Positions 751-26,759 of a stretch of DNA of 64,000 nt are shown one piece after another (positions within the stretch are counted from its first letter, which is position 1; each line of letters begins with the position of its first letter). Both the position numbers and the translations under genes were made by a program. A model generated the notes under the pieces. That model was given only the letters and a program-made list of their open reading frames with translations, did not search any database and was not told the origin of the DNA. Origin of the DNA: Oikopleura dioica (taxonomy: Eukaryota > Animalia > Chordata); NCBI GenBank assembly GCA_907165135.1, contig OU015566.1, positions 3,906,001 to 3,970,000 on the forward strand. The letters are read 5' to 3'.

Positions 751-888
751 AATTTTTGATGCAATGTAAAACTCCTCATAACTGAAGTATTCGGTCGCTC
801 ATAATTTGCACAAATGTCAAGTCTATTTGCACAGAAACGCAGGAATCCAAATTTCATTAGTCGTCGGAAATCAAAAGAGAAAGAAAAA

Positions 889-2027
889 ATGGGATTTTGG
901 GACATTCCAAACTTGAAACTCTATGGAATCCTTACCGCGCTCTTCATCCCCTTTCTTATCGTCAAAATTTGGACAGATTTGAAAAGTAAATTTGGAATTT
1001 TGATCTTTTTGAAATTCAATGATCGCTCGAAAATTGGAGAAGCTTTGGTCGAGATGCGAAAGTGCTTTCAAAAAGGCTCCTGCGTCATTTTTCGAGAATA
1101 CAAGCAGATAAAAATTGAAAAATACGAGTTTCTCAGAGACGTTTCGAAGTACAAGAGTTTTTCGCATATCCTCTGGGCAATTGGTCAAAAATTAAAATAG
1201 CAAAATCTAAATTTGAACAAAAAATGACCAAGAAAAAAGCTTCATTGCGAGTCTGAGTCGCATTTGGACTACATTCTCCCTAAAATTGAGCAGCGGCTGA
1301 ACAATGATCCTGTCGTTGCGAAATCAAAAACGATGAAGCTGAAAGATATTGGACTGGCGCACCTTTTCGACACGATTACTCTCGGAGTTTTCAACAAGAA
1401 AAAGACGTCAGAAAGGTTGGTTCTTTAATTGAGCTTGATTTGAAGGATGCCTTTAAGATTCCTGCGCTTTTACAGTCCACATGTTCGATACGGAGACTGG
1501 AGCAATCGAGACTGGTTCAACATCCTTAGGTAAGAGAACTGAAAGAGCTAGAAATCGAGCCTTTTTAGTCTTATGTACACGTCGGGAATGGAGCGAATTT
1601 CGCGAATTCAAGGCTTCGCTGAATACAAAATGCTCCAAGAGCGTTTTCCTACTCCATCTGGCGGCTTGGTCGAGTCCAAAAAAGACTCGGTCGTTTTCGT
1701 CGAAGTCACTTTTCCCTCCGAAGACAAAGATTCTGTTTGAAATAAAGAAGGCAAATTCTCATTTTTCGCAAGCTTTCCAAGATTTATTTGAAGCTGAAAA
1801 GAGGAAATACAGAAAAAATACAGGAGGATGAAATTTGTTTGTTGGACAGGGAGAAAAAGCAACTTATGTTTACAATTTTTAAACCGGGGAAAAATGGTGA
1901 CTTGCTGGTTGATTTAACAGATTGTTTGAACGAGCGTAGGCAGATAATAATGAACAAAGATATTTGGGGAGGGGATTTAAATGAAAGGCTGATTGACGCT
2001 GATTTTGGACGAATGAAAGTAGAATGA
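889..2027 (+). CDS. Uncharacterised multi-exon protein with N-terminal hydrophobic anchor (gene X, copy 1, apparently intact)
   Basis: MGFWDIPNLKLYGILTALFIPFLIVKIW... followed by spliced exons (LHCESESHLDYILPKIE..., RFLRFYSPHVRYGDWSNRDWFNIL, SLMYTSGMERISRIQGF..., LSKIYLKLKRGN...DFGRMKVE*). Several differences between copies are synonymous in this frame. The first intron donor is uncertain. Confidence 0.6.
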
Positions 2028-2517: not shown

Positions 2518-3524
2518 TACTCATTTCTAAAGTATTTGGTCGCACATAATTTGCACAAATGTCAAGTCTATTTGCACAGAAACGTAGTAATCTAAATTTC
2601 ATTAGCCGTCGGAAATCAAAAGAGAAAAGAAAAAAAAAATGGGATTTTGGGACATCCCAAACTTGAAACTCTATGGAATCCTTACCGCGCTTTTCATCCC
2701 CTTTCTTCTCGTCAAAATTTGGACAGATTTGAAAAGTAAATTTGGAATTTTGATCTTTTTGAAATTCAATGATCGCTCGAAAATTGGCGAGGCTCTGGTC
2801 GAGATGCGAAAGTGTTTTCAAAAAGGCTCTTGCGTCATTTTTCGAGAATACAAGCAGATAAAAATTGAAAAATACGAGTTTCTCAGAGACGTTTCGAAGT
2901 ACAAGAGTTTTTCGCATATCCTCTGGGCAATTGGTCAAAAATTAAAAAAGCAAAATCTAAATTTGAACAAAAAATGACCAAGAAAAAAGCTTCATTGCGA
3001 GTCTGAGTCGCATTTGGACTACATTCTCCCTAAAATTGAGCAGCGGCTGAACAATGATCCTGTCGTTGCGAAATCAAAAACGATGAAGCTGAAAGATATT
3101 GGACTGGCGCACCTTTTCGACACGATTACTCTCGGAGTTTTCAATAAGAAAAAGACCTCAGAAAGGTTGGTTTCCAATTGAGCTAAATTTGAGGGGTGAT
3201 TTTAAGATTCCTGCGCTTTTACAGTCCTCATGTTCGATACGGAGACTGGAGCAATCGAGACTGGTTCAACGTCCTTAGGTAAGAGAGAACCAAAAGAGCT
3301 AGAAACCGAGCATTTTCAGCCTGATGTACACATCGGGAATGGAGCGAATTTCGCGGATTCAAGGCTTCGCTGACTACAAAATGCTCCAAGAGCGTTTTCC
3401 AACTCCTTCTGGCGGCCTTGTCGAGTCCAAAAAAGACTCGGTCGTTTTCGTCGAAGTCACTTTTCCCTCCGAACTGTTTCTGTTTGAAATAAAGAAGGCA
3501 AATTCTCATTTTTCGCAAGCTTTC

Positions 3525-6464: not shown

Positions 6465-6927
6465 TTTCCAAGATTTATTTGAAGCTGAAAAGAGGAAATA
6501 CAGAAAAAATACAGGAGGATGAAATTTGTTTGTTGGACAGGGAGAAAAAGCAACTTATGTTTACAATTTTTAAACCGGGGAAAAATGGTGACTTGCTGGT
6601 TGATTTAAGAGATTGTTTGAACGAGCGTAGGCAGATAATAATGAACAAAGATATTTGGGGAGGGGATTTAAATGAAAGGCTGATTGACGCTGATTTTGGA
6701 CGAATGAAAGTAGAATGACACACCATTATTATTTGCAAGAGTTAATATTTGTTATTGCGAATCGCTGAAGTACGGAAAAGGAAACACTCGGGGCACCGAT
6801 AATGATTTACTCGCTAGAGGAAGCTGAGGATTTGTAAAATTGAACTACTAGGTAAAAAGTATGGTTTTATTTGGAATGCAAATTTTAATTTATTTTTACT
6901 AAAAAAAGAAATAGGAAGAGACAAAAT

Positions 6928-9900
6928 TTACTTTTTTCTCTTTTTATTCTTTTTCTTTCCTCCTTTTTTCGGAGTGTTATTTTGCTTTGCCGTCGCCGAG
7001 CTAGGCTCAGTTTCCGGCTCAGCTGGTTCCACTGGCTCAGTTGGCTCAGCCGACTCGGAAGTCAAAAAATCCTGAGCCAGTGCTTGTGCTACGGTTGGTT
7101 CTGATTTCTCCTCAGATTCTGGCTCTTTCGAGTTTTCGGGTTCTTTTGATACCGGTTCAGATGAAATTTCAGGGGCTGGAGTAGATTCAGAAACAGAACT
7201 TGACTCAACTGGCGTTTCAGGCTCCTTTGGCGCCTCAATTTCGGGAGCACTATCTTTGACGGAATCTGGCTCAACAGAGACTTGCTCAGATGGAACTGAT
7301 GTAGTCTCAGATGGTTCAGATTTTTCCGGCTCATCTGACACTTCAACAGTTTCAGCCTCCGTTACAGGTGCTTTTTCAATCGAATCTGAGGCTGCCTCGA
7401 TCTTAGTTGAGGCTTCCTTTTCAGGCTCGTCTTTTGACTCGTCTGACTTAGTCTCAGAAACTGGCTGACCCTGTTTTTCAACAACTACCGCGGTTTCTTC
7501 AACAACCGTGTCCAAAACAGCCGATTCCTTTTCGATGATCACGCCCGAGTCCGGTTCTGTTTCTGGCGCTGCTTCTTCAGCTTTTTCCTCTACCACTACT
7601 TCCACCTCTATTTTATTATCATCACCGCTAGTTTTTTCTATCACCTCTGGAGAAGAGTTGGTCTCTTTCTCATCGGAGATATCTTCCAACTCCTCTTTTT
7701 CCTCCTCGTTACCCTTATCAGCTTTTTTCTTATCACCCCGTTTCAGGGATGATTTCAGCTTTTCAGAGGAGTTTTTGAGCCCCTTCAGCCCTTTAGAAAA
7801 CGCTTTCGAAGTTTTAGTTTTCGCTTTTCCGAGCCTTTTGGAAATGCCCTTTTTGAGCTTGGCGGACGCGCTCGAGATCGTCGACGACATCGTCAATTCA
7901 GTTACGGTCGTCATCGCGTCTTCCGAGAGTGATTCGTCGTTGTTCTCACCATCATCCTCGTCGGAATCGTCGATGACGATGGGTGGTGTGTCATTTGATT
8001 GATTGGTGGTGCTTTTGGGGGAGGACTGTTAATTCGGTTATTGATTGGTTAGTCGAACATGCGGAAGAGTTTCATTAATAAAATTGGTGTAACAAAATTC
8101 GTAATTTTGTGATTTTTGGCAAGTACTAGAGTCGTAGAATCAAATTAGTGGAAATTAAAGAAGATCATGTGTGAATTCTTCTTCGCAAATCAGCTCACCA
8201 TGCAATTAGAATTGGTCAAAAGTCAATAAATAATAATCAAAAAAGAATCGTCCAATAGAAAATATCGTTTTGAGAAAGTATATTTTAACAAAAGATAAAG
8301 AGTAGGCTACAAACTAGAAGATGAGCTATTTTGGACTATTTTGCTTGAGAGAGGTTATTTTGGATAAGCCGAAGACCTGAGACGATTTCTTCTTATCAGG
8401 CGTATTCGGTGGAGAGGCGGATTCTAGCGACGCTGCTGTTAGACTGCTTTCAGCTTTTTCGGGAACTTTTTCTGAAAAAGAAGCTTTTTAGATCGGGTTT
8501 TGAAATTTCGGAATGGTAAATGTAAACGAATTTTTCGCCCCGTGAATCAAAATCTTAAATGAATTGTCTGTGAATTTTCAGAAAGAAAAAAAAATTCAGT
8601 CAAAAATCAAGGAAATAATACTCTTTTGGCACTTTATTGTCGATTTTCAAGCCTAAAACAACACACGCAAAACTAAAACCCTGAAAAACAGCGAAAGAAC
8701 TAACCTGGAGAAGGGAGGGGCGATTCGTCTTTAGGGAGATCATCTTCTATCGGCAAAGCACTTTGAACTTTCAGATCTGTGAGTGGGTTTCATTCATTTT
8801 TAATAGTGGCAAAATCGAGGTGCTCCTGAATGATTTTTGGTGAAGAAAAACAAGGCTCGTGAAGAAATAAATAAAGTTGAACTGAAACAGCAAGAGTACG
8901 GAGTTCTAGTGATAAATGAAGAAATTACGGAAGCTTCCATCTAGTATGGAAGAAATGCATGCAAATGATTGTCAACTAATTGAAGAAAATGGTGAAGAAA
9001 TAAACGACAACGTAATAAAATGCCCAGTAAATCATCAGAAGCTGGACTGACATTTCCGTATTTCGCATTTTATCACACTTGTCACTCTCCTCTTTCACTA
9101 GGATTTTTAAAGCACGCCACAAATGTTCAAAACTTATCAATAAAAAGAACCCTTCCTTTTTCTACTTTCGAAATGAGCATGTCGAGAGGCTCATCATCGG
9201 GATCAGTGGCGTCTTTTGACGATGCAACTGGCTGAAGATGATCGTCGATCTCGATCTCGGGGTCGGAAATAGGCTCTGGGCTGGGCTCGGTGGATTCGTA
9301 CTCGACGGGAACATTGACGGACTTTTTGGAGACTGGCTAAAATTCTTACCTTCGTTTATACTTTGTTGAGAAGCAACTGAAGCTCTGGATGAGTGCCTTG
9401 ATCTTTGACTTCCTGTATCAGCCTGGGGCGAGCCGCCGAAAGAGCGGAGGGAGGGACGAGAAGTGACAGAGGTGATGCTTCTTTGAGATGGTTGTCGGGA
9501 GAGGTTTTCAGCTGGAGTAGGGAGGACGTACTCGCCATGAGTTGTGCTAGCCATCGACATCTAAAACGAAATGAGCTCGAAACCTAGCAAGATTGACTTA
9601 CCTTTGATTGAGCTCGATTGACTGATGTCAAGCTTTGAAGAGAGCCATGATCGGTCATGAATCGCTGGAGCCTGTTGATGATTTCTTCTTGATATCCCCA
9701 TCTCCAACGGACTCCATTCATGAAGCACAGATCTCTTATCGCTTCGGGAACACTGTCTGGCACTGGCCATTTCCAGCCAGGAGCCACCATTGGAATGATG
9801 TTGCAACCTTTAGCGAAAGCAGTCACGATCCAGCGATAAAACGGATCGAGAGCGAGAGTGTTTTCATCTTCGCAGGCGTTTTGAATGAGATTTTCAAGGC

Positions 9901-10669
9901 AACCTGGTGTCAGGACGAGAAGGAAGTGACCTGCGTGAGCGATGTTCGATTCGTGGCGGAGGGTGACTTCGTCGGACTTCGGGATCAAGCCCCAGTTGGT
10001 AGCGACGGAGAAAGATCGCAGACGGAGGTAGGCGCAGAGGGACTCGCTCAGAAGTTGACCCTCTTTCCAGGAGCAGACGAAGACTAAAGAAAAAATGATC
10101 AAAAAGAGCACTTTAATAAGAGTTAGTAAGTAAAAGGTAAGTTAAACAGCTATACATGCAGATAGACATTATAACGGCTTGATTTTAAAGGGGCCAGACC
10201 AGAAGACCCTGAGACCTTAATTTCCACTACAAATCCTATCATTTTCTGTCAACATCACTTCACCAAAATGACGAAAAACGCTATCCGATTTCAAACCTCT
10301 TTCAAAGCAGCAGTATTTATCTACTGAATCGTTTGTAATTTACGAAAATTCTTCCAATACTTCGAAGTTTATGAAAATATCAGTCGGACTTACCATCCTT
10401 TGGATCCTGCACATCGTCATGTCCATTTGCTCCCTCGTCGCGGCGAACTGCCTCTAGAATTTTTGTTCTGTGGACTCCATTGGTGATTTGGCAGTCGACT
10501 TTCAAGTGCTCGTCTGTTAGATGGGGCAAGAAATCGCGATCGACGCCAGCTTGAATGAGATGAAAAGTGTACTGGCTGAATTCGCGGCCGATTCCGGACA
10601 GCCACTTTTGAATGCCACTTGCATCTTCGCTCGTGTAATCGCCATTGATTCGTAGTTCGACGAGGTCTT
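6928..10669 (-). pseudogene. SARM1: 5'-truncated SARM1 duplicate (part of SAM + TIR + C-terminal tail, with a ~1.1 kb internal deletion)
   Basis: Colinear with 13976-19379. It lacks the ARM exons, has a deletion junction at ~9338 (skipping ~16926-18047), and ends at a fusion with a PIPOX fragment at ~10669. Confidence 0.82.
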
Positions 10670-11801
10670 GCGTGTCTACGAGCGAGTTTTGATCAGTTTC
10701 TGAAAATCGGTGGCAAATTCATTGACGGATTCAAATTGAAGGATTTCCAGGACGACGGCAAGGAAACAGGATTTCTCAAGGACAGCCGGCAAGCATCAAT
10801 GTTAAAATTAACACTCGGAAACCGCATCAATACAGAAGCTAAATATATCCGTGTCGGTGTCAAATTTTGGAGGGACAATGCTTCAAAGCTCCCTCAGCGC
10901 TTAAGCTTCCTTGAATTGTAATATTTTCATCCTTGCGGTTTTCGGGTCTTTTCGGAATTTTCATCGAGAAAATCCTTTGTAAGACTGTTACCGTATATTC
11001 TACCGACGGCAAAAGCCATGTGGGAAGAAAACTCATTCTGGGTAAATTTTATCTTCATTTGATTGAAAATAAAATTTGTTCAAAGCTTGTGGTGCTTGGG
11101 CAAAGAAGATACTCGCGAAAACAGGGCTTGAAATCCCTCTTGAAGTAATTAAAACAGAAGTGTCTTATTGGAAAGTGAAGCCTGATTTCGCTGGAAAGGT
11201 ACTCTTGATATTCATGTATTCTGTTATCAGATTCAAAAGTACGACATAAGCTGCTTTCCCGCTGGAATCATTGATGTTAACAACAAAGAAACCGGCGAAA
11301 TCTATCACTACTACTGGACACCAGGTTCATTTGCTACAATAAAGCACATTTTCGAAATCTTTTTTAGTGAAAGAATACCCAAATCTGATAAAAATTTCGT
11401 ACCACGGAACCTATCGAGATGAAATCGACCCGGACGAGCGAGATGATCCAGAAAAAGAGTCATCTAAACGGGCAAAAGATCAGCTGGAAGATCACAAGAG
11501 GATAATTGACCTTCATTTCGAAGGAATTGACTCATCCAATCCAGTTATCGTTGAGCCCTGCATGTATACTGTAAGAAATCATACCAAAAACATAACTAAA
11601 ATCGGTCTCTAGAACACGCCTGACAACGACTTCATCCTCGATGTCCACCCAACAATGAAAAATGTCGTCATCGGCGCAGGATTCTCCGGTCATGGATTCA
11701 AAATGTCGCCAGAAACGGGTGAAATTCTAGCGGATCTCGCGCTTGAAAAAGAGCCTGCTTATGATATGAGCTTTTTCTCACTCGATCGATTCAATAAATA
11801 A
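10667..11801 (+). pseudogene. PIPOX: 5'-truncated PIPOX duplicate
   Basis: LACLRASFDQFLKIGGKFIDGFKLKDFQDDGK|TVTVYSTDGKSHVGRKLIL|ACGAW...GAGFSGHGFK...DRFNK*. Begins mid-gene at the junction with the SARM1 fragment, so the N-terminal FAD-binding motif is missing. Confidence 0.82.
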
Positions 11802-11953
11802 AATTTTTGATGCAATGTAAAACTCCTCATAAGTTATGAGTCATAACTGAAGTATTCGGTCGCTCATAATTTGCACAAATGTCAAGTCTATTTGCAGAGA
11901 AACGTAGAAATCCAAATTTCATTAGTCGTCGGAAATCAAAAGAGAAAGAAAAA

Positions 11954-13769
11954 ATGGGATTTTGGGACATTCCAAACTTGAAACTCTATGGAATCCTTAC
12001 CGCGCTCTTCATCCCCTTTCTTATCGTCAAAATTTGGACAGATTTGAAAAGTAAATTTGGAATTTTGATCTTTTTGAAGTTCAATGATCGCTCGAAAATT
12101 GGAGAGGCTTTGGTCGAGATGCGAAAGTGCTTTCAAAAAGGCTCCTGCGTCATTTTTCGAGAATACAAGCAGATAAAAATTGAGAAATACGAGTTTCTCA
12201 GAGAAGTTTCGAAGTACAAGAGTTTTTCGCACATTCTTTGGGCAATTGGTCAAAAATTAAAGATCGCAAAATTCAAAATTTAGCAAAAATGACCAAGAAA
12301 AAAGCTTCATTGCGAGTCTGAGTCGCATCTGGACTATATTCTTCCTAAAATTGAGCAGCGGCTGAACAATGATCCTGTCGTGGCGAAATCAAAAACGATG
12401 AAGTTGAAAGACATTGGACTTGCGCACTTTTTCGACACGGTTACTCTCGGAGTTTTCAACAAGAAAAAGACCTCAGAAAGGTTGGTTCTTTAGGAAAGAT
12501 AGATTCTAGTGATGATTTTAAGATTCCTGCGTTTTTACAGTCCACATGTTCGATACGGAGACTGGAGCAATCGAGACTGGTTCAACATCCTGAGGTAAGA
12601 GAACCAAAAGAGCTAGAAACCGAGCATTTAAGGGTATAGTCATCGATTTTGGTCGGGTCTCCAATTTTTAATCTGAGCACATTTTTAGAATCCCCATAAA
12701 TTTCTGACCAAAAAACTTATGATTATTTTGGTTATCTTAACCTATTTGGCCGCAAATTGCGTTTGAAAGTGGCGAAATTTAGTGCATTTTGATCATTAGC
12801 CGAATATTTTGAAATTTTGACCATTTTTAGGGGCCTTGTAAGGGTGCCATATGATACATTTTTAGAAAGCTTATATTCAGGGCATTTATTTAGGACCACG
12901 TAGGGTAAATTTGGGCTATGCCCGCAGGGCATTTTATCAAAATGAAAGGTAAAAATTTGGTACCTTGGTTCTTTTGAAAATTTTTCAAAGAAAATTAGAT
13001 GATTACAGTATAAGGCTGTGTCATTTTTAAGATTAGGGTCTATATTTTAAGAAAAAAACATAAAATCAATAGGTTTATATAGAAACTTTGGACTTATAAC
13101 GCCTTGAAAAGAGGCAATTTTCGCGTTATTTGGCCGAGAGCTCAACTTTGAGCGATCCGCAAACCATGATTTTCTTGGAAATAACGTAAAAAGCTGTGAC
13201 AAAAGTGAGATCTAGGATAGATCTTTTATATGACCTATTTTAGAGCCTCCCACATATTCCCAGTTCCGAGTTATAACCCCCTGAAATCGGCCAAATCGAC
13301 GACTATACCCTTAAAGTCTGATGTACACGTCGGGAATGGAGCGAATTTCGCGAATTCAAGGCTTCGCTGACTACAAAATGCTTCAAGAGCGTTTTCCGAC
13401 TCCATCTGGCGGCTTGGTCGAGTCCAAAAAAGACTCGGTCGTTTTCGTCGAAGTCACTTTTCCCTCCGAAGACAAAGATTCTGTATGAAATAAAATACAA
13501 AATTCTTAATTTTCGCAAGCTTTCCAAGATTTATTTGAAGCTGAAAAGAGGAAATACAGAAAAAATACAGGAGGATGAAATTTGTTTGTTGGACAGGGAG
13601 AAAGCAACTTATGTTTACAATTTTTAAACCGGGGAAAAATGGTGACTTGCTGGTTGATTTAACAGATTGTTTGAACGAGCGTAGGCAGATAATAATGAAC
13701 AAGGATTTTTGGGGAGGGGATTTTGAAAGGCTGATTGACGCTGATTTTGGACGAATGAAAGTAGAATGA
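11954..13769 (+). pseudogene. Gene X copy 3 (MITE in an intron, 2-nt deletion frameshift in the last exon)
   Basis: Homologous to 889-2027. gggagaaagcaac here versus gggagaaaaagcaac in copies 1 and 2 shifts the last-exon frame. Confidence 0.65.
12632..13310. mobile_element. Non-autonomous DNA transposon/MITE, 679 bp, TTAA TSD, GGG...CCC termini (Kolobok-like)
   Basis: TIR GGGTATAGTC(A/G)TCGATTT. TTAA at 12628-12631 and 13311-13314. Absent from the same intron in gene X copies 1 and 2. Confidence 0.88.
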
Positions 13770-13975
13770 CACACCATTATTATTTGCACGAGTTAATATT
13801 TGTTATTGCGAATCGCTGAAGTACGGAAAAGGAAACACTCGGGGCACCGATAATGATTTACTCGCCAGAGGAAGCTGAGGATTTGTAAATTGAACTACTA
13901 GGTAAAAAGTATGGTTTTATTTGGAATGCAAATTTTAATTTATTTTTACTAAAAAGAAATAGGAAGAGACAAAAT

Positions 13976-16900
13976 TTACTTTTTTCTCTTTTTATTCTTT
14001 TTCTTTCCTCCTTTTTTCGGAGTGTTATTTTGCTTTGCCGTCGCCGAGCTAGGCTCAGTTTCCGGCTCAGCTGGTTCCACTGGCTCAGTTGGCTCAGCCG
14101 ACTCGGAAGTCAAAAATCCTGAGCAAGTGCTTGTGCTACGGTTGGTTCTGATTTCTCCTCAGATTCTGGCTCTTTCGAGTTTTCGGGTTCTTTTGATACC
14201 GGTTCAGATGAAATTTCAGGGGCTGGAGTAGATTCAGAAACAGAACTTGACTCAACTGGCGTTTCAGGCTCCTTTGGCGCCTCAATTTCGGGAGCACTAT
14301 CTTTGACGGAATCTGGCTCAACGGAGACTTGCTCAGACGGAACTGATGTAGTCTCAGATGGTTCAGATTTTTCCGGCTCATCTGAAACATCAACAGTTTC
14401 AGCCTCAGTAACAGGTGCTTTTTCAACCAAATCTGAGGCTGGCTCGATCTTATTTGAGTCTTCCTTTTCAGGCTCGTCTTTTGACTCGTCTGACTTAGGA
14501 GCCTCCTTGGTCTCAGAGACTGGCTGATCCTGTTTCTCAACAACAATATCGGTTTCTTCAACAACAGTGTCTAAAACAGCCGATTCTTTTTCAATAATCA
14601 CGCCCGAGTCTGGTTCTGTTTCTGGCGCTGCTTCTTCAGCCTTTTCCTCTACCACTACTTCCACCTCTATTTTATCATTATCACCGCTAGTTTTTTCTAT
14701 CACCTCTGGAGGAGAGTTGATCTCTTTCTCATCGGAGATATCTTCCAACTCCTCTTTTTCCTCCTCGTTACCCTTATCAGCTTTTTTCTTATCGCCCCGT
14801 TTCAGGGACGATTTCAGCTTTTCAGAGGAGTTTTTGAGCCCCTTCAGCCCTTTAGAAAACGCTTTCGAAGTTTTAGTTTTCGCTTTTCCGAGCCTTTTGG
14901 AAATGCCCTTTTTGAGCTTGGCGGACGCGCTCGAGATCGTCGACGACATCGTCAATTCAGTTACGGTCGTCATCGCGTCTTCCGAGAGTGATTCGTCGTT
15001 GTTCTCACCATCATCCTCGTCGGAATCGTCGATGACGATGGGTGGTGTGTCATTTGATTGATTGGTGGTGCTTTTGGGGGAGGACTGTTAATTCGGTTAT
15101 TGATTGGTTAGTCGAACATGCGGAAGAGTTTCATTAATAAAATTGGTGTAACAAAATTCGTAATTTTGTGATTTTTGGCAAGTACTAGAGTCGTAGAATC
15201 AAATTAGTGGAAATTAAAGAAGATCATGTGTGAATTCTTCTTCGCAAATCAGCTCACCATGCAATTAGAATTGGTCAAAAGTCAATAAATAATAATCAAA
15301 AAAGAATCGTCCAATAGAAAATATCGTTTTGAGAAAGTATATTTTTACAAAAGATAAAGAGTAGGCTACAAACTAGAAGATGAGCTATTTTGGACTATTT
15401 TGCTTGAGAGAGGTTATTTTGGATAAGCCGAAGACCTGAGGCGATTTCTTCTTATCAGGCGTATTCGGTGGAGAGGCGGATTCTAGCGACGCTGCTGTTA
15501 GACTGCTTTCAGCTTTTTCGGGAACTTTTTCTGAAAAAGAAGCTTTTTAGATCGGGTTTTGAAATTTCGGAATGGTAAATGTAAATGAATTTTTCGCCCC
15601 GTGAATCAAAATCTTAAATGAATTGTCTGTGAATTTTCAGAAAGAAAAAAAATTCAGTCAAAAATCAAGGAAATAATAACAGGTTTTTTTTTATTCTGCT
15701 CCAAATTGGTGGAGCGTTTTTGAAGGTGTTAGAGTCGAGATATTTCAATTCTCTCTTTTGCACCACGTTGGGGAGGGTCTGTAGTGTGTTAAATAAGCTT
15801 TTGGCGTCAACACCATAACTGGTGGTGGAGTAATCAGCAGGTCAAAAATACACTAAAATCATAGGAAAAAATCTTGATGACGTCATTACTCCACCACCAA
15901 CACTGGTGTTTGCGCCAAAAATGCCAAGAATGTTTGATATTGCTGTAAGGAACACCCCTAAGTGATGAAATTGCAGATATATAGACTGTTAGTACTTTTC
16001 AATTTTATTGTGTCCCCCACGACCAGTCGGAAATTCCGGATTCATGACGTCATTGCTCCACCACCAGTGATGTTGAAGGCACCAAAAGCTTATTTAACAC
16101 ACTACAGACCTTTCTCTACATGACACAAAAGAGAGAACTAAAAAATGTTGAGTTTAAGGTAGTCAAAAGTGCTCCACCATTTTGCATCAGTATAAAAAAA
16201 AACCTGTTAATACTCTTTTGGCACTTTATTGTCGATTTTCAAGCCTAAAACAAAACACGCAAAACTAAAACCCTGAAAAACAGCGAAAGAACTAACCTGG
16301 AGAAGGGAGGGGCGATTCGTCTTTAGGGAGATCATCTTCTATCGGCAAAGCACTTTGAACTTTCAAATCTGTGAGTGGGTTTCATTCATTTTTAATAGTG
16401 GCAAAATCGAGGTGCTCCTGAATGATTTTTGGTGAAGAAAAACAAGGCTCGTGAAGAAATAAATAAAGTTGAACTGAAACAGCAAGAGTACGGAGTTCTA
16501 GTGATAAATGAAGAAATTACGGAAGCTTCCATCTAGTATGGAAGAAATGCATGCAAATGATTGTCAACTAATTGAAGAAAATGGTGAAGAAATAAACGAC
16601 AACGTAATAAAATGCCCAGTAAATCATCAGAAGCTGGACTGACATTTCCGTATTTCGCATTTTATCACACTTGTCACTCTCCTCTTTCACTAGGATTTTT
16701 AAAGCACGCCACAAATGTTCAAAACTTATCAATAAAAAGAACCCTTCCTTTTTCTACTTTCGAAATGAGCATGTCGAGAGGCTCATCATCGGGATCAGTG
16801 GCGTCTTTTGACGATGCAACTGGCTGAAGATGATCGTCGATCTCGGGATCAGAAACTGGCTCTGGGCTGGGCTCGGTGGATTCGTACTCGACGGGAACAT

Positions 16901-19900
16901 TGACGGACTTTTTGGAGACTGGCTCGGGCTCGGGAGAGGAAGGGATGGATTCAGGGGTGGGTTCCACTGCAGCTTGAGTCGTGACGATTGCCGCACTATT
17001 TCCACTAAAAGGGTCATAATTATGGGATTGTTTTTCAGCTCTTACCTTGCAAGTTCATCGACGCTCATCTTTTCATCCTCTTTTTGTGGGATTCCTTGGG
17101 GAGGGTCCTTGTCAAGAACCGTCTCTTGAATCACATTTTCGAAGATTTGAGAAGTGCTACGTTCGGAAAGACTTGTCGGACTTGCTAGAACCGGGGAACC
17201 AAGAGTGGCGTTATTCGGAGAGTTTGGAGGCAAAGATGCTCGAGAAGAGGCACGGGAGAGGCTTTGTGGCTTCGGTGGAGGAACTGGTTTGTCAGAAGCG
17301 ACGCTTGAACGGCCAGATGCGACGGAAGATCTGCTGCTTGCTCTAGAATTGATTGTTAAGGAGGTATCTGTGTCTAATACGCGGTATTCTCGCGCGTACA
17401 AACTTCTCACACCTTAATTTTACTGTTTCGAAGGGTTGAACTCTACAGAAACACAAACAGTAACTCTAGCTCTACTTTCACCACTTCGATAGACATTTCC
17501 AAGTTGGAAATTCCAACTTATTCTCGGATTCTTACCTGAGCATATCTGGTCTTGGAAGCGACGCTGTAGAAAGTCGATTACTTGCCACTGAATTTCTGCT
17601 AGATGCTCGACCGAGTGTGTTATCAGCAAGTCTACTGTAACGCTGGCTAGCGGAGGAGGAGAGGGAGACATTACTGTTGCTTCGCGATGGGGGCAGTGGG
17701 GGCTTGGAGCCGCGGAAGGAAAGTGAAGCTTGACTGGATGCTCGGGAGGATGAACGAAGAGGTTGTTTGTCTGGTGAGCCAGCAGGGGATGAGCCGTTTT
17801 GAAGCTCAGCGGCTTCTTCTGGAACTTTTAAAATAATGTTAAAACTGCTCTTGGTGAAGGGAAAATAATGACAGGCAAAATAAGTGAATGTAAAACCGGC
17901 ATCAAGGCTTTGATAAATGGTAAATGAGCTTATTACGAAGGGATGAACTCATTATTGACTTGAGTGGAGTACTCGCAGCGATAGGGCGTCTGTTTTGACG
18001 ATGGATTACAACTTTTCGTTCGTGAAAAAATACTCCTTTGACGATATAAATGCTTACCTTCGTTTATACTTTGTTGAGAAGCAACTGAAGCTCTGGAAGA
18101 GTGTCTTGATCTTTGACTTCCTGTATCAGCCTGGGGCGAGCCGCCGAAAGAGCGGAGGGAGGGACGAGAAGTGACAGAGGTGATGCTTCTTTGTGAGGGT
18201 TGTCGGGAGAGGTTTTCAGCTGGAGTAGGGAGGACGTACTCGCCATGAGTTGTGCTAGCCATCGACATCTAAAGAGACATGAGCTTGAAATCACGCAAGA
18301 TTAACTTACCTTTGATTGAGCTCGATTGACTGATGTCAAGCTCTGAAGAGAGCCATGATCGGTCATGAATCGCTGGAGCCTGTTGATGATTTCTTCTTGA
18401 TATCCCCATCTCCAACGGACTCCATTCATGAAGCACAGATCTCTTATCGCTTCAGGAACACTGTCTGGCACTGGCCATTTCCAGCCAGGAGCCACCATTG
18501 GAATGATATTGCAACCTTTAGCGAAAGCAGTCACGATCCAGCGATAAAACGGATCGAGAGCGAGAGTGTTTTCATCTTCGCAGGCGTTTTGAATGAGATT
18601 TTCAAGGCAACCTGGTGTCAGGACGAGAAGGAAGTGGCCTGCGTGAGCGATATTCGTTTCGTGGCGGAGGGTGACTTCGTCGGACTTCGGGATCAAGCCC
18701 CAGTTGGTAGCGACGGAGAAAGATCGTAGACGGAGGTAGGCGCAGAGGGACTCGCTCAGAAGTTGACCCTCTTTCCAAGAGCAGACGAAGACTAAAGAAA
18801 AATGATCGAAAAGAGTACTTCAAAAAGAGTTAGTAAGTAAAAGTTAAGTTAAACAGCTATACATGCAGATAGACATTATAACGGCTTGATTTTAAACGGG
18901 CCAGACCAGAAGACCCTGAGACCTTAATTTCCACTACAAATCCTATTATTTTCTGTCAACATCACTTCACCAAAATGACGAAAAACGCTATCCGATTTCA
19001 AACCTCTTTCAAAGCAGCAGTATTTATCTACTGAATCGTTTGTAATTTACAAAAAATTCTTCCAATACTTCGAAGTTTATGAAAATATCAGTCGGACTTA
19101 CCATCCTTTGGATCTTGCACATCGTCATGTCCATTTGCTCCCTCGTCGCGACGAACTGCCTCTAGAATTTTTGTCCTGTGGACTCCATTGGTGATTTGGC
19201 AGTCGACTTTCAAGTGCTCGTCCGTTAGATGAGGCAAGAAATCGCGATCGACGCCAGCTTGGATGAGATGAAAAGTGTACTGGCTGAATTCGCGGCCTAT
19301 TCCGGACAGCCACTTTTGAATGCCACTTGCATCTTCGCTCGTGTAATCGCCATTGATTCGTAGTTCGACGAGGTCTTGGATGAACTTCCGGCGGTGGAAC
19401 TTGTTTGACATCAGGAAGACCTGGACGAGATCGTCTTCGTTGAGCAACAGGAGCATTCGCCCATCGCAGCAGGACTCAACAGCCGTGGCGGCGAAGTCCT
19501 TGAATCCGTTGATTTCGAACCATGTGGCGACGTCGTCGGTGTCCCACATGTGCACTTGGGGGCAGAGCTTGACGGGGATGGGAATGTCCATGATTCTCAA
19601 GCAATTCGATGCTAGTTCTCTTGCGTAACCACTCAAGGTACTCGCTGCGCACTTTTTCAACGCGGCGATGTTGTTCGTGTCGCTGAAAACATCAAATTGT
19701 CGCATCGCTTTCCGCGCTAGAACTTCTTGAAGAAGAAAAAACGCGCCGATTGCCTGGATCGTTCCATTGTTGGAATAGAGGAGTTGGTTGACGCGCTCGA
19801 GGATAGGAGGAGCGATTCCATAGGCGATGCGTTTGCTATTCTCGAGTTGGAAGCTTTCGCATTTGAAAAAGTCGTGATGGGTTTGAAGGAACTCGTTGGC

Positions 19901-21214
19901 CAGCGGGTTTTGGAATGTTATGTTGATAGACGGTTCTTTGTTGGAAGCGAGAACAGCAAGTGCAAGCGAAGCATGGAAAACGGCAAAATCAACACTCGAC
20001 GCTTGAATGATGGATAAATAATGGTGCACGCCGAGCTTGGACATGCGCTCATGAATCGAGTGTTTGGTATTGCTCGCCAGAGCAGAAAAGCTATAAAATT
20101 GCGCCGCGAATCGAGCAACGGCCGGCTCGTCGATGCGTTCCAGCGCCGTCGCGACGATGTCGAAGGCTTTCAGTCGAATTAACTTGGAGATGACTTCGTC
20201 CGATTCTTTCACGCAGGCAGCGAGAACTTCTAGCGCGGCGCTGCGGAACTCGAAGTTTTTGCTTCTGAAAAAAATGATTATTCAATGAAAGAGCTAGAGA
20301 AAAGCCTCCTACGGCTTTTTCGAACGAAGAAACTTGGTTTCCAAGCCGAAAAAAGCAGCATGCGGCTCAATATTCGGGATATTTTTGAAAATATTACCTG
20401 ACATAATGATCGAAGCAGTTGACGACCGCCTGTAAGTTGTCCTGTTTGCAAATAAATTTCCTAATTTCTGGAATAAATATCGACGCAGCGATCAATTTGA
20501 GTGATTCCAGCACCAGTTCGGGAGGCGAGTCGGGAGCGAGCGAGTCGACCGCCAAATGCAAAATTTCTCGTTCAAGTAGATGTCCGGAAAATTGCACCGC
20601 CAAATTAGCCTGCTTGTCTTCCCAGGCTTGGTCGATTATCGCCGTTGCGTGCCCAAAGCCTGACTCTTTTCCATCAATGTCTGAAAAGGATCAATTAGTA
20701 GCCATACGCGTTTGAGTTAATTGAATGCAGCTTTGAGCATGGTAGTCTCCAGCCTCAAGGGATCATTTTTCTTTGAAGAAAAAGAGCTGGTTATATTCAC
20801 TTTAACTGGTTGGTGATTGATTAAAGTAATGATGATGAATTTAATTCTTTGGGAGTTAAACAGTGGCTTTAGAAATTGGCTCACGGTATGATTCTGAAGA
20901 TTGAGCTCGGTAACCTGTGAAAAAACTGAGTAAGGGTCTTGAAAGAGCTGTGCGGAATTATGAGAGCTTTTATCGGCATCCTGACTTAGGTTTCAACACA
21001 AGTTATCGAGCCCAGCGCTAATGCACATAGAAACCCGTCCATCAAAGTTTATTTTCCTACCTTCAGGATCAATTTTGGCAAAATGCTTTAAAACATTGTT
21101 GAATCTGGCGACCAAAGCTCCATGTGGCGATTGATTCTCAGGCTTCATCGTTGCTGACCTGGCCATCGTTGTATTTGCACGCTTATTTGTGTTCTCATTG
21201 ATGTATATTTTCAT
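13976..21214 (-). CDS. SARM1: SARM1/TIR-1 orthologue (ARM-SAM-SAM-TIR) with a long C-terminal extension; multi-exon
   Basis: ARM region (IIDQAWEDKQ..., LAACVKESDEVISKL), tandem SAMs (WDTDDVATWFEINGFKDF; IQKWLSGIGREFSQYTFHLIQAGVDRDFLPHLTDEHLKVDCQITNGVHRTKIL) and TIR (DVFVCSW...HFLLVLTPGCLE...NIIPMV...WKWP...NGVRW...YQE). Downstream exons splice in phase to the stop at 13976. The first exons (20750-21214) are tentative. Confidence 0.85.
15679..16207. mobile_element. MITE with long imperfect TIRs (~530 bp) in a SARM1 intron
   Basis: Termini ACAGGTTTTTTTT...AAAAAAAACCTGT with arms that pair over ~200 bp. The empty site ggaaataatactc at ~8611 in the duplicate implies a TAATA (or AAT) TSD. Confidence 0.88.
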
Positions 21215-22429
21215 AAATCTTCGAATCGTAAAAACAAGTCCAAAAAAATAAGCTTCTCTATATGATGATTTTATCCAGATTCAATTTTACGTGCTCTAAA
21301 ATCCAGAAGAATTAACACTTTTTATGCCTAAGCGCAATTTTTCTCCGGTCAAATTCCTTTCACCACCCAGAAAAAGATAGAATTCTCATAAAAATAATCA
21401 TTTTTGATCTAAAAATCGCAAAATAATTAATGGTATTCGCGATTTTCTTCATAAATAGCTCCTTTTCGACCATTTTTGAGGAGCTTTTTTGACCATAATA
21501 ATGGAATTTTAGTAAGAAAAATTTTCATTGATAAAAATTTGAAAACACATGCCTGGGGCAATCTGCCCGCCTTATTATTTCCACCTGGCGACGAGAAAGT
21601 TTGCGCTCTTCCCAAACTCATTTCTCCATTTTTCTCTGAAAACAAAATTTTTCTTCAAAACGCAATTTTCTTCTTCTTTCAATCGATTCTCTGGCAATTA
21701 AATTTTTTAAATATTTTCGAGCGCTGGAAAAAAAATTGGAGAAAGAAAAAAATAATTTTACGCACGACGGCGCGCCGCGGCTTGATTCGAATTTGCCCAA
21801 TCACCGGCGCGAGAGAAAGCCCTCGGGGCAAATTCAGTCAAGAGAAGAGTACGCAGCTCGGCGGTACGTGTCCGATTTTTTCTAGATTTCTCTTGGAAAA
21901 ATGAGGAAAAGCTCGCTTTTCGGGTTTTGGCAAATTCAAAATCCAATATCTTGATTTTTATGAATTCGAAATTTTCAAATATTTGAGATGAATAAATTTT
22001 ATTTTATTGCCGCGTTCGTGATTCAGAATTTAGTGGGTTTTCATGTGATATTTGAAGCAATATGGGTTTTTCGACCAATCAGAAGCCTTCATTGTTTTCT
22101 CAGCCAATCATAGAGCGCATACCTAAAGACACCCCCAATTTCTACGGAGCTAATAATAGAATAGCCCCAGACTATCCGAAATAACCACAAAAGCTTCTCA
22201 TTGGTCGCAATCCCCTATATTGACTTATTATATAACAAATTTTCAATTTGTTTCTTGAATAAATTTTACCGATGCTTCGAAAACTTCTCAAACTGCTTCC
22301 TCTGGTCAAATACTGAATCTCTTCTATTCCAGCCATTCTTCAATTTCTCTTTTTTAGACCCGATTCAGCTGCTTTTCAAATTGAATCATTCAAACTCAAA
22401 TCTTCGAATAAAGAAAACTGAAGATAAAA

Positions 22430-25297: not shown

Positions 25298-26759
25298 TTA
25301 TAAGGTGTACCCAGTAGTGCAGGAGGGAGTTGGAGGGCAAGAATTGACATCTGCGACTCCAGCTTTTTTGGGTCAGCAAAGGTTTTTGTCAACAAGGTTT
25401 TTTGTCAACAAGGCTTTTCGACAACAAGGCTTTTTGTCAACAAGGCTTTTTGTCAACAAGGTTTTTTGTCAACAAGGCTTTTTGTCCGCAAGGCTTTTTG
25501 TCGACAAGGCTTTTTGTCAACAAGGTTTTGTCAACAAGGCTTTTTGTCAACAAGGTTTTGTCAACAACGCCTTTTGTCAACAAGGTTTTGTCAACAAGGC
25601 CTTTTGTCAACAAGGTTTTGTCAACAAGCTCTCGAAGCTATTGCTGACCTTTCCTGTAAAAGTGCAAACATCAATCGATCCATCAAGATAAAAAGTCCCG
25701 GTCGTCGAAAAAGAAAACGCATTGAATTCAAAATCAAGAACTCTATTTGTCGAAACCATCGAGCTGCCATCTATTGGCCCAAAATCAAGAATCGTCGTCT
25801 TGCAAAAATCCTTGACGACCTCGTAAGAGTTTCCTGTACGACTAGAATCTTCATAACTGATGAGATTCTCCAGGTAGAACTCGGCGTTGGAGGCTAATGA
25901 CGGGGCGGAAATTCTGGCGTAGATTTTTTGACCGACGAGGGAGGTCGAGATGGCACTGGTTCGGCTTGAGTCTTCGAAGAGTTCTAGCGTTGCGACATTT
26001 GAAATCTAGATTTTTCAATCAAAACGCTTTTTCTGCTTGTTTTACCTGAAGATTCTGAGTTTCTTGATCTCCAATCAAGCTCGGCGCAACTGTCACTCCC
26101 TCAAACCCTTCATCAACTGTTTCACTTCCATCCCTCCAGATCTCACAACTCGCAGTGTATTTGAAAACATCATCGAATCCACTGATACTCGCCCCTGTTA
26201 TTTCCCAAGTGAGCAGGAGTCCATCGTCAATCGCTGCTATTGTTGGGTCGCATTCGGAGATTTCAAAACTTTCAACGAATCTTGTCATCATTGGAGCACT
26301 TGATCCCGTACAAGAGCCGATTTTAATTCGCGCGTCTGATTCTTGATTAGATGGAAGATCGAGGTAAATGTCTTTGACATTTGCAACGACAACCAGCGAA
26401 TTTCCTTGAATATATCAGAGTCAGTAAAGGCTTCCTGTGAAGCTAAAATCGTCATTTTTCTGGGGTTTTGTCAGGAACCGACAATAAAATTTCGACAAAT
26501 TTTGCGTGGGCGGCTACTCGGCTTCTGATTGGCCGGTAAGCCGAATACAGGCTTCTGATTGGTTGAAAATTTCCACGCAAAATTTGTCGAAATTTTTTGC
26601 CGGTTTCTGTCAAAATCCCATTTTTCTTCCTGTACCTGTGCAGACAACCGCGATATTCGTCTGCTTGCATGTCCCTGTACTCGACTCATAAGTCCAGTTC
26701 TCTGGGCATGCGAAACCAAACGCTTCTCTTATCAAGAAAAACAGGACAAAAAGGGGCAT
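25298..26759 (-). CDS. Secreted zona pellucida (ZP)-domain protein
   Basis: Signal peptide MPLFVLFFLIREAFG, then CPENW...C...VVC. ZP-N-like exon (SEC...YTASC) and ZP-C-like exon (VGQKIYARI...FYLENL...VVKDFC...FEFNAFSFS...YLDGSIDVC). Confidence 0.7.
25372..25630. repeat. Intronic minisatellite, ~15-nt unit (TTTTGTCAACAAGGC), forming 30-nt higher-order repeats
   Basis: Visible tandem repeat inside the last intron of the ZP gene. Confidence 0.9.
26474..26607. mobile_element. Palindromic MITE carrying CTGATTGG (CCAAT) motifs
   Basis: TIR GGAACCGACAA..AATTTCGACAAATTTTGCGTGG. Related copies at 46771-46903 and 60798-61148. Confidence 0.8.

What the first reader, a model, noticed from the sequence alone, without database searches (positions are those of the whole stretch)
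18310..18790. SARM1 TIR domain lacks the NADase catalytic glutamate: a candidate pseudo-enzyme SARM1
Seen in both copies: LDPFYRWIVTAFAKGCNIIPMV. Aligned from memory to human [22 protein letters not shown], catalytic E642 becomes W and W638 becomes P. DVFISYRR becomes DVFVCSWK (Y568, R569 lost), FIDVE becomes ATNWG (D594, E596 lost) and WSHEY becomes WRWGY (H685 lost), while W662, N679 and Y687 equivalents remain. Established: E642 is required for SARM1 NAD+ cleavage and axon degeneration. The ARM pocket residues W103 (DQAW) and K193 (CVKES) appear retained, and inter-copy changes are mostly synonymous. Inference: a selected, catalytically dead SARM1 acting as a sensor, scaffold or dominant negative, implying loss or rewiring of programmed axon death in this lineage.
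Basis: partly seen in the sequence, partly recalled or inferred. Interest (0 to 1): 0.86.

Follow-up and report, generated by a model that had tools for sequence, protein, structure and literature searches.

The report
Oikopleura SARM1 without its catalytic glutamate
The only SARM1 gene seen in this planktonic tunicate window keeps the ARM-SAM-SAM-TIR build of the axon-death enzyme but has lost the catalytic glutamate and most NAD-pocket residues, yet stays under strong purifying selection, so it is probably a conserved non-enzymatic SARM1.

Summary
A minus-strand gene (exons 21166-21061, 20680-20398, 20264-19102, 18791-18310, then a tail) encodes ARM-SAM-SAM-TIR. It matches human SARM1 residues 185-543 at E=5e-43 and the SARM1 TIR at E=7e-15.

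HMMER and MAFFT both put Trp (TGG, 18538-18540) at catalytic E642. That column is Glu in all 60 canonical SARM1 cluster representatives. Also changed: Y568/R569/R570, D594/E596/G601/F603, W638 and H685. The fold is kept (AlphaFold pLDDT 89; best PDB match is the human SARM1 TIR).

It is not a pseudogene. An orthologous marine-metagenome locus with saturated synonymous sites differs by 7 of 161 residues (dN/dS about 0.01-0.02). Four more divergent relatives share the same derived motifs, with W or F at E642. The loss is therefore old and selected.

- "Copy A" is only a partial 3' duplicate (SAM2, TIR, part of the tail).
- The ARM NMN/NAD pocket is mostly not retained (W103 and K193 kept; R110, E149, Q150 lost).
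- ARM and TIR diverged together, while the SAM domains stayed near normal.

Most likely this is a SAM-ring scaffold without NADase activity. Activity, same-strain expression, ascidian SARM1 and a possible second SARM1 elsewhere in the genome were not tested. I found no paper on it.

The parts
21061..21166 (-). Exon 1 (predicted start codon, N-terminal 35 codons)
   Evidence: The ATG is at 21166 and a GT donor follows 21061. The N-terminus aligns with the 65%-identical relative P0185 best when exon 1 joins directly to 20680. This is an inferred model; the 30-nt candidate exon 20885-20914 was rejected.
20398..20680 (-). ARM exon (N-terminal ARM repeats, DQAW = W103 equivalent)
   Evidence: AG/GT boundaries. 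The AW motif aligns with W103 of canonical SARM1 in MAFFT. The exon gives no PDB hit on its own. Metatranscriptome contig at 20513-20682.
19102..20264 (-). Large exon: C-terminal ARM repeats, SAM1, SAM2 and linker
   Evidence: phmmer against human SARM1 residues 185-543, E=5.3e-43. Pfam SAM_1/SAM_2 hits. Metatranscriptome contigs at 19535-19958.
18792..19101 (-). Intron between the SAM2 and TIR exons
   Evidence: GTAAGT donor and TTTAG acceptor read from the sequence. No metatranscriptome contig lies in it.
18310..18791 (-). TIR exon (whole TIR domain)
   Evidence: phmmer against the human SARM1 TIR, E=6.8e-15. AlphaFold2 pLDDT 89.4. Foldseek top hits are human SARM1 TIR, target-normalised TM about 0.8. 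dN/dS 0.01-0.02 against L001. Metatranscriptome contig at 18441-18740.
18538..18540 (-). TGG codon: Trp at the position of catalytic Glu642
18406..18408 (-). TGG codon: Trp at the position of His685 (EE loop, WRWGYQ instead of W-x-H-[DE]-Y-Q)
   Evidence: It covaries with position 642 across relatives (W/W or F/F).
18685..18711 (-). Rebuilt BB-loop region ATNWGLIPK (replaces F-I-D594-V-E596-K-L-E-A-G601-K)
   Evidence: The NWG motif is conserved in relatives L001, L005, L006 and P0074.
18772..18792 (-). Box 1 / AA loop VFVCSWK (replaces VFISYRR). The first codon spans the splice junction.
   Evidence: VFVC(S/A)W is conserved in L001, L005 and L006.
18269..18309 (-). 41-nt intron after the TIR exon
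   Evidence: GTAAGT donor after AAG(K) and TTTAG acceptor before ATGTCG, read from the sequence.
17933..18268 (-). First exon of the Ser-rich C-terminal tail. The open frame runs to 17933; the true donor was not determined.
   Evidence: In frame with the TIR exon. The motifs GSLQSLTS and SQRSITSVTSR are conserved in L001, L004, L005 and L006.
9602..10083 (-). Copy A: duplicated TIR exon (W codon at 9830-9832)
   Evidence: 8 nt and 1 aa (T46S) differ from copy B. Part of the 97% duplication.
10394..10670 (-). Copy A: duplicated 3' end of the SAM exon (SAM2 only). The duplication ends at 10670.
   Evidence: A stop codon lies upstream in frame, and there is no ARM or SAM1.

Best explanation
This is the SARM1 orthologue of an appendicularian tunicate; earlier notes of this scan call the genome Oikopleura dioica.

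Shown:
- The gene is intact and has the ARM-SAM-SAM-TIR build.
- The catalytic Glu642 position holds Trp (Phe in some relatives).
- The residues that bind NAD+/ribose in canonical SARM1 (AA loop Y568/R569/R570, BB loop D594/E596/G601/F603, W638, H685) are replaced by a different motif set that is itself conserved: VFVCSW, NWG, W/F, W-[KR]-[WF]-G.
- The TIR fold is predicted to be intact.
- The domain is under strong purifying selection.
- ARM and TIR diverged disproportionately, while the SAM domains kept near-normal conservation.

Inferred:
- The protein no longer cleaves NAD+ and no longer needs NMN/NAD+ allosteric control.
- It still assembles through its tandem SAM domains into an oligomeric ring.
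- It works as a non-enzymatic scaffold or adaptor. The output would be a remodelled TIR surface (former active-site cleft filled by a co-varying aromatic pair at positions 642 and 685) plus a conserved Ser-rich C-terminal tail.
- This would resemble the NADase-independent TIR-1 to ASK1/p38-type signalling described in C. elegans.
For: - Architecture and orthology: SAM_1/SAM_2 hits. ARM+SAM exon against human SARM1 185-543, E=5e-43. TIR against human SARM1 TIR, E=7e-15. Foldseek top 36 hits are all SARM1/TIR-1.
- Catalytic column: E in 130 of 141 informative cluster representatives, and in 60 of 60 canonical rows. These include fast-evolving flatworms, Dimorphilus and copepods.
- Selection: against L001, 87 nt differences but only 7 aa differences; dN 0.026-0.028, dS 1.2-2.1. 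Four environmental variants all keep DPFYRW.
- Age: L004 (W), L005, L006/L007 and P0002 (F) share all the derived motifs at 43-52% identity. L006 carries ARM-SAM and TIR on one contig.
- Tree: the clade sits inside SARM1 TIRs on a stem of 3.5 changes per site, and is separate from a SAM-TIR family that also lost Glu.
- Domain identity of the window protein to canonical SARM1: TIR 33-36%, ARM 14-27%, SAM 32-43%. Among canonical animals: TIR 66-76%, ARM 34-65%, SAM 41-50%.
- The D627 equivalent, needed for NADase-independent TIR-1 function (PMC10121217), is kept as D/E.
- Poly-A metatranscriptome contigs lie on three exons and in no intron.
Against: - There is no enzymatic assay, so 'dead' rests on sequence only.
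- Side-chain geometry of the model could not be inspected, so the claim that aromatics fill the cleft is inference. The 642/685 covariation may be a single evolutionary event.
- Three RNA-seq runs labelled as the same species gave zero reads at 97% likeness. The tool calls this 'no test'.
- Transcript support comes only from six short contigs of an environmental metatranscriptome, which could include DNA.
- The rest of the genome was not searched for a second, canonical SARM1.
- In Drosophila all tested SARM1 functions need NADase activity (PMC9223315), so a purely scaffolding SARM1 has limited precedent.
Confidence: 0.68

Rival explanations
1. This is a divergent paralogue, and a canonical Glu-bearing SARM1 exists elsewhere in the genome. 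The gene would then act as a regulator or dominant-negative partner that co-assembles through its SAM domains.
For: The rest of the genome was not searchable here. Human K193R/H685A SARM1 is known (my own knowledge) to act as a dominant negative, so mixed octamers are plausible. A partial SAM2-TIR duplicate sits next door.
Against: - Canonical SARM1 queries hit only the two W-bearing TIR exons in the 64-kb window.
- The scan's notes list no other SARM1 in this genome.
- SARM1 is typically single-copy per genome (PMC7075850).
- The exhaustive protein search found no canonical TIR close to this clade.
- The full ARM-SAM-SAM-TIR build and its presence in at least 5 divergent lineages fit an orthologue.
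Confidence: 0.12
2. The TIR is still an enzyme, using other residues or another substrate (for example base exchange, or nucleic-acid or other nucleotide cleavage), so it is a changed enzyme rather than a pseudoenzyme.
For: Strong purifying selection acts on the whole domain, including the remodelled loops. New motifs (NWG, W/F, WxWG) are conserved around the old cleft.
Against: - The Glu is required in every TIR NADase tested (bioRxiv 10.64898/2026.04.20.719644; PMC7075850).
- No acidic residue is conserved across the clade in or next to the alphaC helix.
- At least eight further pocket and loop residues changed at once.
- The regulatory ARM pocket decayed in parallel.
Confidence: 0.1
3. The locus is a decaying or unexpressed pseudogene, or the substitution is an assembly or sequencing error.
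For: Pfam TIR models do not score the domain at E<=0.01. Same-species-label RNA-seq gave no reads. Copy A is truncated.
Against: - The frame is open across 678 codons with canonical GT-AG sites.
- dN/dS is 0.01-0.02 at saturated dS.
- The same TGG codon is present in both copies, in at least 5 independent environmental contigs, and in a metatranscriptome contig.
- The fold prediction is confident.
Confidence: 0.03

Closest known systems
SARM1 / dSarm / TIR-1 (metazoan ARM-SAM-SAM-TIR NAD+ hydrolase)
   Same: Same domain order. Best sequence and fold match for the ARM-SAM region and the TIR. The tandem SAM domains are conserved at near-canonical levels. The structural core motifs NI(I/V)P, W662-P, N679, W683 and Q688 are kept, as are W103 and K193 of the ARM domain.
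   Different: - Catalytic E642 -> W/F.
- Box 1 Y, R569/R570, the BB loop E(R/K)LEAG, W638 and the EE loop H(D/E)Y are all replaced.
- ARM R110 and E149/Q150 are lost.
- TIR identity to canonical SARM1 is 33-36%, against 66-76% among canonical animals.
- There is a long Ser-rich C-terminal tail.
- Pfam TIR models do not score it.
Engineered NADase-dead SARM1/TIR-1 (E642A, E788A, H685A)
   Same: It lacks the same catalytic residue(s). C. elegans tir-1(E788A) still supports regulation of regeneration and injury-induced degeneration (PMC10121217), which shows that NADase-independent outputs exist.
   Different: Those are single-point laboratory mutants in an otherwise canonical protein. Here a whole suite of pocket and regulatory residues changed naturally and was then fixed and conserved. 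In Drosophila the equivalent mutants lose viability and NMJ signalling (PMC9223315).
Adaptor-type animal TIR domains (MyD88, TIRAP, endosomal TLRs), in which the Glu is rare
   Same: TIR fold without the catalytic Glu, presumed to signal by protein-protein assembly (PMC7075850).
   Different: They are not related by descent beyond the TIR superfamily. This domain derives from the SARM1 subgroup (tree) and sits on a SAM oligomerisation module.
Unnamed marine SAM-TIR proteins (clusters P0013, P0034, P0171, P0031, P0068)
   Same: SARM1-like TIR with W, V, N or Q at the Glu column. They also escape the Pfam TIR models.
   Different: They have one SAM and no ARM, are about 400-450 aa long, and form a separate, well-supported clade. 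Their loss of Glu is independent.

Membership tests
SARM1 orthologue group (by descent) | ARM repeats, two SAM domains and a C-terminal TIR in one protein | tested here: met
   Pfam SAM_1/SAM_2. Alignment to human SARM1 185-543, E=5e-43. TIR E=7e-15. In relative L006, ARM-SAM and TIR lie on one contig.
SARM1 orthologue group (by descent) | Closest sequence and fold match is SARM1 rather than another TIR family | tested here: met
   All PDB sequence hits are SARM1/TIR-1. Foldseek ranks 1-36 are SARM1/TIR-1. The TIR tree places it inside the SARM1 TIRs.
SARM1 orthologue group (by descent) | Single SARM1-like gene per genome (no canonical copy elsewhere) | not testable with these tools
   Only the 64-kb window could be searched. 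The scan notes list no other SARM1.
SARM1 TIR subgroup ('group 24' of Toshchakov & Neuwald 2020, PMC7075850) | Catalytic Glu (E642/E75), more than 90% conserved | tested here: not met
   W in the window, in both copies and in L001 and L004. F in L005, L006 and P0002.
SARM1 TIR subgroup ('group 24' of Toshchakov & Neuwald 2020, PMC7075850) | Box 1 P-D-V-F-I-S-Y | tested here: not met
   It reads DVFVCSW. DVF is kept, but the Y and the following RR are lost.
SARM1 TIR subgroup ('group 24' of Toshchakov & Neuwald 2020, PMC7075850) | BB loop E-(R/K)-L-E-A-G | tested here: not met
   Replaced by NWGLIPKS. D594 -> N, E596 -> G, G601 -> D.
SARM1 TIR subgroup ('group 24' of Toshchakov & Neuwald 2020, PMC7075850) | EE loop H-(D/E)-Y-Q | tested here: not met
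   W-G-Y-Q in the window; F-G-L-Q in relatives. Only the Q is kept.
TIR-domain NAD+ hydrolases (functional class) | NAD+ cleavage dependent on the conserved Glu | not testable with these tools
   Needs a biochemical assay. The sequence predicts no activity.
SARM1 allosteric regulation (NMN/NAD+ pocket in the ARM domain) | W103, R110, E149, Q150, R157, K193 (residue list from my own knowledge of published structures) | tested here: not met
   W103 and K193 are kept. R157 may be kept after a 1-residue shift. R110 -> N, and the invariant LLEQ becomes IAAS/IAST. R322 -> I by the HMMER alignment.
SARM1 SAM-ring oligomer | Tandem SAM domains able to form the octameric ring | tested here: inconclusive
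   Both SAM domains are present and 32-43% identical to canonical ones, against 41-50% among canonical animals. Oligomerisation itself was not tested.

The most novel reading that the evidence does not exclude
An entire chordate lineage (appendicularians) converted SARM1 from a regulated NAD+-destroying enzyme into a non-enzymatic SAM-ring scaffold. The catalytic cleft was plugged by a co-varying aromatic pair (positions 642 and 685: W/W or F/F). The NMN/NAD+ sensing pocket of the ARM domain decayed in parallel, and a conserved Ser-rich tail was added. These animals would then lack SARM1-NADase-driven axon destruction, and their SARM1 would be a natural separation-of-function allele that isolates the NADase-independent activity of SARM1.
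Probability: 0.5. Interest if true: 0.72.

Novelty: new variant of a known kind. Interest (0 to 1): 0.62.

Why it matters
SARM1's NADase activity is treated as its defining and near-universal function. The catalytic Glu was present in every canonical animal SARM1 representative examined here, including fast-evolving flatworms.

A naturally Glu-less SARM1 that has been kept under strong purifying selection across several divergent lineages would show that the ARM-SAM-TIR assembly has a selectable function that does not need NAD+ cleavage. It would also mark the surfaces that carry that function (the conserved new motifs and the tail).

It makes testable predictions about axon degeneration in a tractable, transparent chordate with a very small nervous system. 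Finally, it is a caution for annotation: Pfam TIR models miss this domain, and automatic naming would label the gene 'NAD(+) hydrolase'.

Tried and rejected
- Same-species-label RNA-seq (X6-X8) laid at 97% likeness gave zero reads. The tool states this is no test, probably because of cryptic-species divergence.
- A 30-nt candidate exon (20885-20914) in my first gene model was dropped. The relative P0185 aligns better without it, and the metatranscriptome contig ending at 20682 fits a direct exon 1 to exon 3 join.
- The N-terminal ARM exon alone finds nothing in the PDB or by tblastn. The W103 equivalence rests on MAFFT only.
- Attempts to find ascidian or thaliacean SARM1, in order to date the loss, failed. 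The 120 listed hits and the 20 clusters named held no tunicate.
- Papers: no hit for SARM1 or SARM with Oikopleura that concerns this gene. Tassia et al. 2017 is not held.
- The ESM Atlas look-up returned only generic bacterial TIR clusters.
- I considered a link between this clade and the Glu-less SAM-TIR family (P0013 and others). The tree separates them.
- Residue-level structural superposition was not possible, because the tools return no coordinates.
Full report
**What is in the sequence**

The feature lies on the minus strand. Translating 18310-18792 gives an uninterrupted TIR-sized domain, VFVCSWKEG...ATNWGLIPK...LDPFYRWIVTAFAKGCNIIPMV...GVRWRWGYQ....

It ends at a GTAAGT donor. A 41-nt intron follows, then an in-frame Ser-rich exon.

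Upstream lies a 310-nt intron, then an 1163-nt exon carrying two Pfam SAM domains. phmmer aligns that exon to human SARM1 residues 185-543 at E=5.3e-43.

A further ARM exon (20680-20398) and a first exon (21166-21061) complete a 678-codon frame with canonical GT-AG sites. I dropped a 30-nt candidate exon because the 65%-identical relative P0185 aligns better without it.

The gene is therefore an ARM-SAM-SAM-TIR protein, which is the SARM1 architecture.

**The observation**

HMMER against PDB chains of human SARM1 (E=6.8e-15) aligns 'dpfyrwivta' with '[10 protein letters not shown]'. There is no gap up to the flanking NI(I/V)P motif, so catalytic E642 corresponds to Trp, encoded by TGG at 18538-18540.

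An exhaustive HMMER search of 1.84 billion cluster representatives gave 192 hits. Glu occupies this column in 130 of 141 informative rows.

A MAFFT alignment of 60 canonical SARM1 TIRs gives the following:

| Human residue | Conservation in 60 canonical rows | Residue in the window |
|---|---|---|
| E642 | 100% | W |
| D637 | 100% | E |
| H685 | 97% | W |
| D594 | 98% | N |
| E596 | - | G |
| G601 | 97% | D |
| F603 | 95% | V |
| W638 | 87% | T in this alignment; P in the ungapped HMMER register; lost either way |
| Y568 | 98% | W or S (depending on where the one-residue gap is placed) |
| R569 / R570 | 97% / 95% | lost |

Kept are N652, P655, W662-P663, N679, W683, Q688 and a D/E at D627.

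By the published definition of the SARM1 TIR subgroup, this domain fails every functional motif while keeping the structural core. That definition comprises Box 1 PDVFISY, BB loop E(R/K)LEAG, pocket residues more than 90% conserved, and EE loop H(D/E)YQ (PMC7075850).

Pfam TIR models do not score the domain at E<=0.01. Even so, AlphaFold2 with a 72-sequence alignment gives pLDDT 89.4. Foldseek ranks human SARM1 TIR structures first, with target-normalised TM about 0.8, and ranks 1-36 are all SARM1/TIR-1.

**The 'two copies'**

Self-comparison shows that 6465-10670 duplicates 13521-19378 at 97% identity, with two deletions.

Copy A starts inside the SAM1-SAM2 linker. It has an in-frame stop just upstream and lacks ARM, SAM1 and a start codon. 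It is a partial 3' duplicate (SAM2, TIR and part of the tail), not a second gene.

Its TIR exon differs from copy B at 8 nucleotides. Seven are synonymous (P about 4e-4 if one quarter of sites are synonymous).

Canonical SARM1 queries find no other TIR exon in the window.

**Is it a live gene?**

- A 5.9-kb marine-metagenome contig (L001) is collinear with the locus from the intron before the TIR exon into the tail, at about 74% DNA identity.
- In the TIR exon it differs at 87 of 483 nucleotides but only 7 of 161 residues. dN is 0.026-0.028 and dS is 1.2-2.1, so dN/dS is about 0.01-0.02.
- Four further environmental variants keep DPFYRW.
- A poly-A marine metatranscriptome has contigs on the TIR exon (18441-18740), the ARM/SAM exon (19535-19958) and the ARM exon (20513-20682). 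None lies in an intron.
- The TIR contig carries the copy-A allele at all six sites where the copies differ. Either copy A is transcribed, or that allele sits in the full gene in that population.
- Three RNA-seq runs labelled with the species gave no reads at 97% likeness, which the tool calls no test.

Pseudogene and sequencing-error explanations are effectively excluded by the selection signal.

**How old is the change?**

More divergent relatives from marine metagenomes share the same derived motifs:

| Relative | Identity to the window | Residues around the E642 position | Residue at E642 |
|---|---|---|---|
| L004 | TIR 52% | FHRWMECAL | W |
| L005 | extra introns | ARFLIAAL | F |
| L006/L007 | ARM-SAM 47%, TIR 43%, both on one contig | AKFIVAAL | F |
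| P0002 | TIR 48% | AKFIVAAL | F |

All of these whose sequence covers the relevant regions have VFVCSW, SNWG and W-[KR]-[WF]-G. They also share a conserved start of the tail, GSLQ(S/T)LT...SQRSITSVTSR.

Positions 642 and 685 covary: W with W, F with F. This may reflect a single evolutionary event.

In a maximum-likelihood tree the clade is well supported (99/98). It sits inside the SARM1 TIRs on a stem of about 3.5 changes per site, against a median terminal branch of 0.46. It is separate from a family of about 400-450-aa SAM-TIR proteins without ARM, some of which also lack the Glu.

Named SARM1 proteins all keep the Glu. These come from insects, echinoderms, hemichordates, amphioxus, molluscs, brachiopods, flatworms, an annelid and a copepod. 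I could not retrieve ascidian sequences, so the loss is dated only to before the divergence of these relatives.

**Which domains changed?**

Percent identity by domain:

| Comparison | TIR | C-terminal ARM | N-terminal ARM | SAM |
|---|---|---|---|---|
| Among canonical animals | 66-76 | 51-65 | 34-47 | 41-50 |
| Window protein to canonical SARM1 | 33-36 | 21-27 | 14-16 | 32-43 |

The catalytic domain and its autoinhibitory, metabolite-sensing domain lost their usual constraint together. The oligomerisation module did not.

In the ARM pocket, W103 (DQAW) and K193 (CVKES) are kept and R157 possibly.

**Mechanism**

Shown: an intact, selected SARM1-type gene without the catalytic residue or most pocket residues, with a conserved replacement motif set and a predicted intact fold.

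Inferred: there is no NADase activity and no NMN/NAD+ gating. Assembly would be through the SAM domains, and signalling through a remodelled TIR surface and the Ser-rich tail.

Precedent for NADase-independent output exists in C. elegans. There tir-1(E788A) still regulates regeneration through NSY-1/ASK1-PMK-1 and still allows injury-induced degeneration, whereas D773 (human D627) is needed (PMC10121217). The D627 equivalent is kept here as D/E.

Against this, Drosophila needs the NADase activity for viability and for NMJ signalling (PMC9223315). All catalytic animal TIRs tested depend on the Glu (bioRxiv 10.64898/2026.04.20.719644).

My estimates are: about 0.9 that this is a real, selected, Glu-less SARM1-type gene; about 0.8 that it lacks NADase activity; and about 0.4 for the specific scaffold and MAPK-adaptor mechanism.

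**Novelty**

No paper in the library links SARM1 or SARM with Oikopleura for this gene. The survey of TIR families reports the Glu as more than 90% conserved in SARM1 orthologues, without describing exceptions.

I class this as a new variant of a known kind: a natural pseudoenzyme derivative of SARM1.

The identification of the organism as Oikopleura dioica comes from earlier notes of this scan. I did not check it independently. Compact introns and marine-plankton sources are consistent with it.

Noticed in passing
window 6465-10670 versus 13521-19378 (also 1754-2517): Tandem segmental duplication at 97% identity with two deletions in the upstream copy. It carries a partial SAM2-TIR-tail copy of SARM1 and the downstream acidic Ser/Glu-rich ORF (6928-7914 and 14110-14973); a third partial copy lies at 1754-2517. 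It could be a real duplication or uncollapsed haplotypes. A metatranscriptome contig matches the copy-A alleles exactly.
   Followed up: partly
window 17933-18268 and downstream; L001:1019-1230, L004:560-740, L006:3500-3880: The start of the Ser-rich C-terminal tail after the TIR domain (GSLQSLTS..., SQRSITSVTSRPSLRS) is conserved in relatives down to 43% TIR identity, so the tail is part of the conserved protein.
   Followed up: partly
TIR residues 85 and 129 (window 18538-18540 and 18406-18408): The replacements of E642 and H685 covary across relatives: W with W in the window, L001 and L004; F with F in L005, L006, P0002 and P0008. This suggests an aromatic pair in the former active site, but it may be a single evolutionary event.
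   Followed up: partly
proteins P0013, P0034, P0171, P0031, P0068 (marine metagenomes): A separate family of about 400-450-aa proteins with one SAM and a SARM1-like TIR but no ARM. Several lack the catalytic Glu (W, V, N or Q), and Pfam TIR models miss them. The source organisms are unknown.
   Followed up: partly
window 25351-25645: Array of roughly 14-16-nt tandem repeats (TTTTGTCAACAAGG-like units, at least 16 copies).
   Followed up: no
window 868-1519, 2618-3269, 11933-12584: Three copies of a repeat of about 650 nt or more, at 74-98% identity, flanking the duplicated block.
   Followed up: no
runs X6-X8 laid on window 15500-21400: Bulk oligo-dT RNA-seq labelled with the same species gave no read at 97% likeness. 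An environmental orthologous locus (L001) is only about 74% identical in DNA but 96% in TIR protein. This is consistent with deeply diverged cryptic lineages under one species name.
   Followed up: no
L005:40-800 and L006:3312-3359: Relatives have extra short introns inside the TIR coding region (a 48-nt in-frame intron after CNIIP in L006; three introns in L005) that the window gene lacks. Intron positions turn over quickly in this clade.
   Followed up: no
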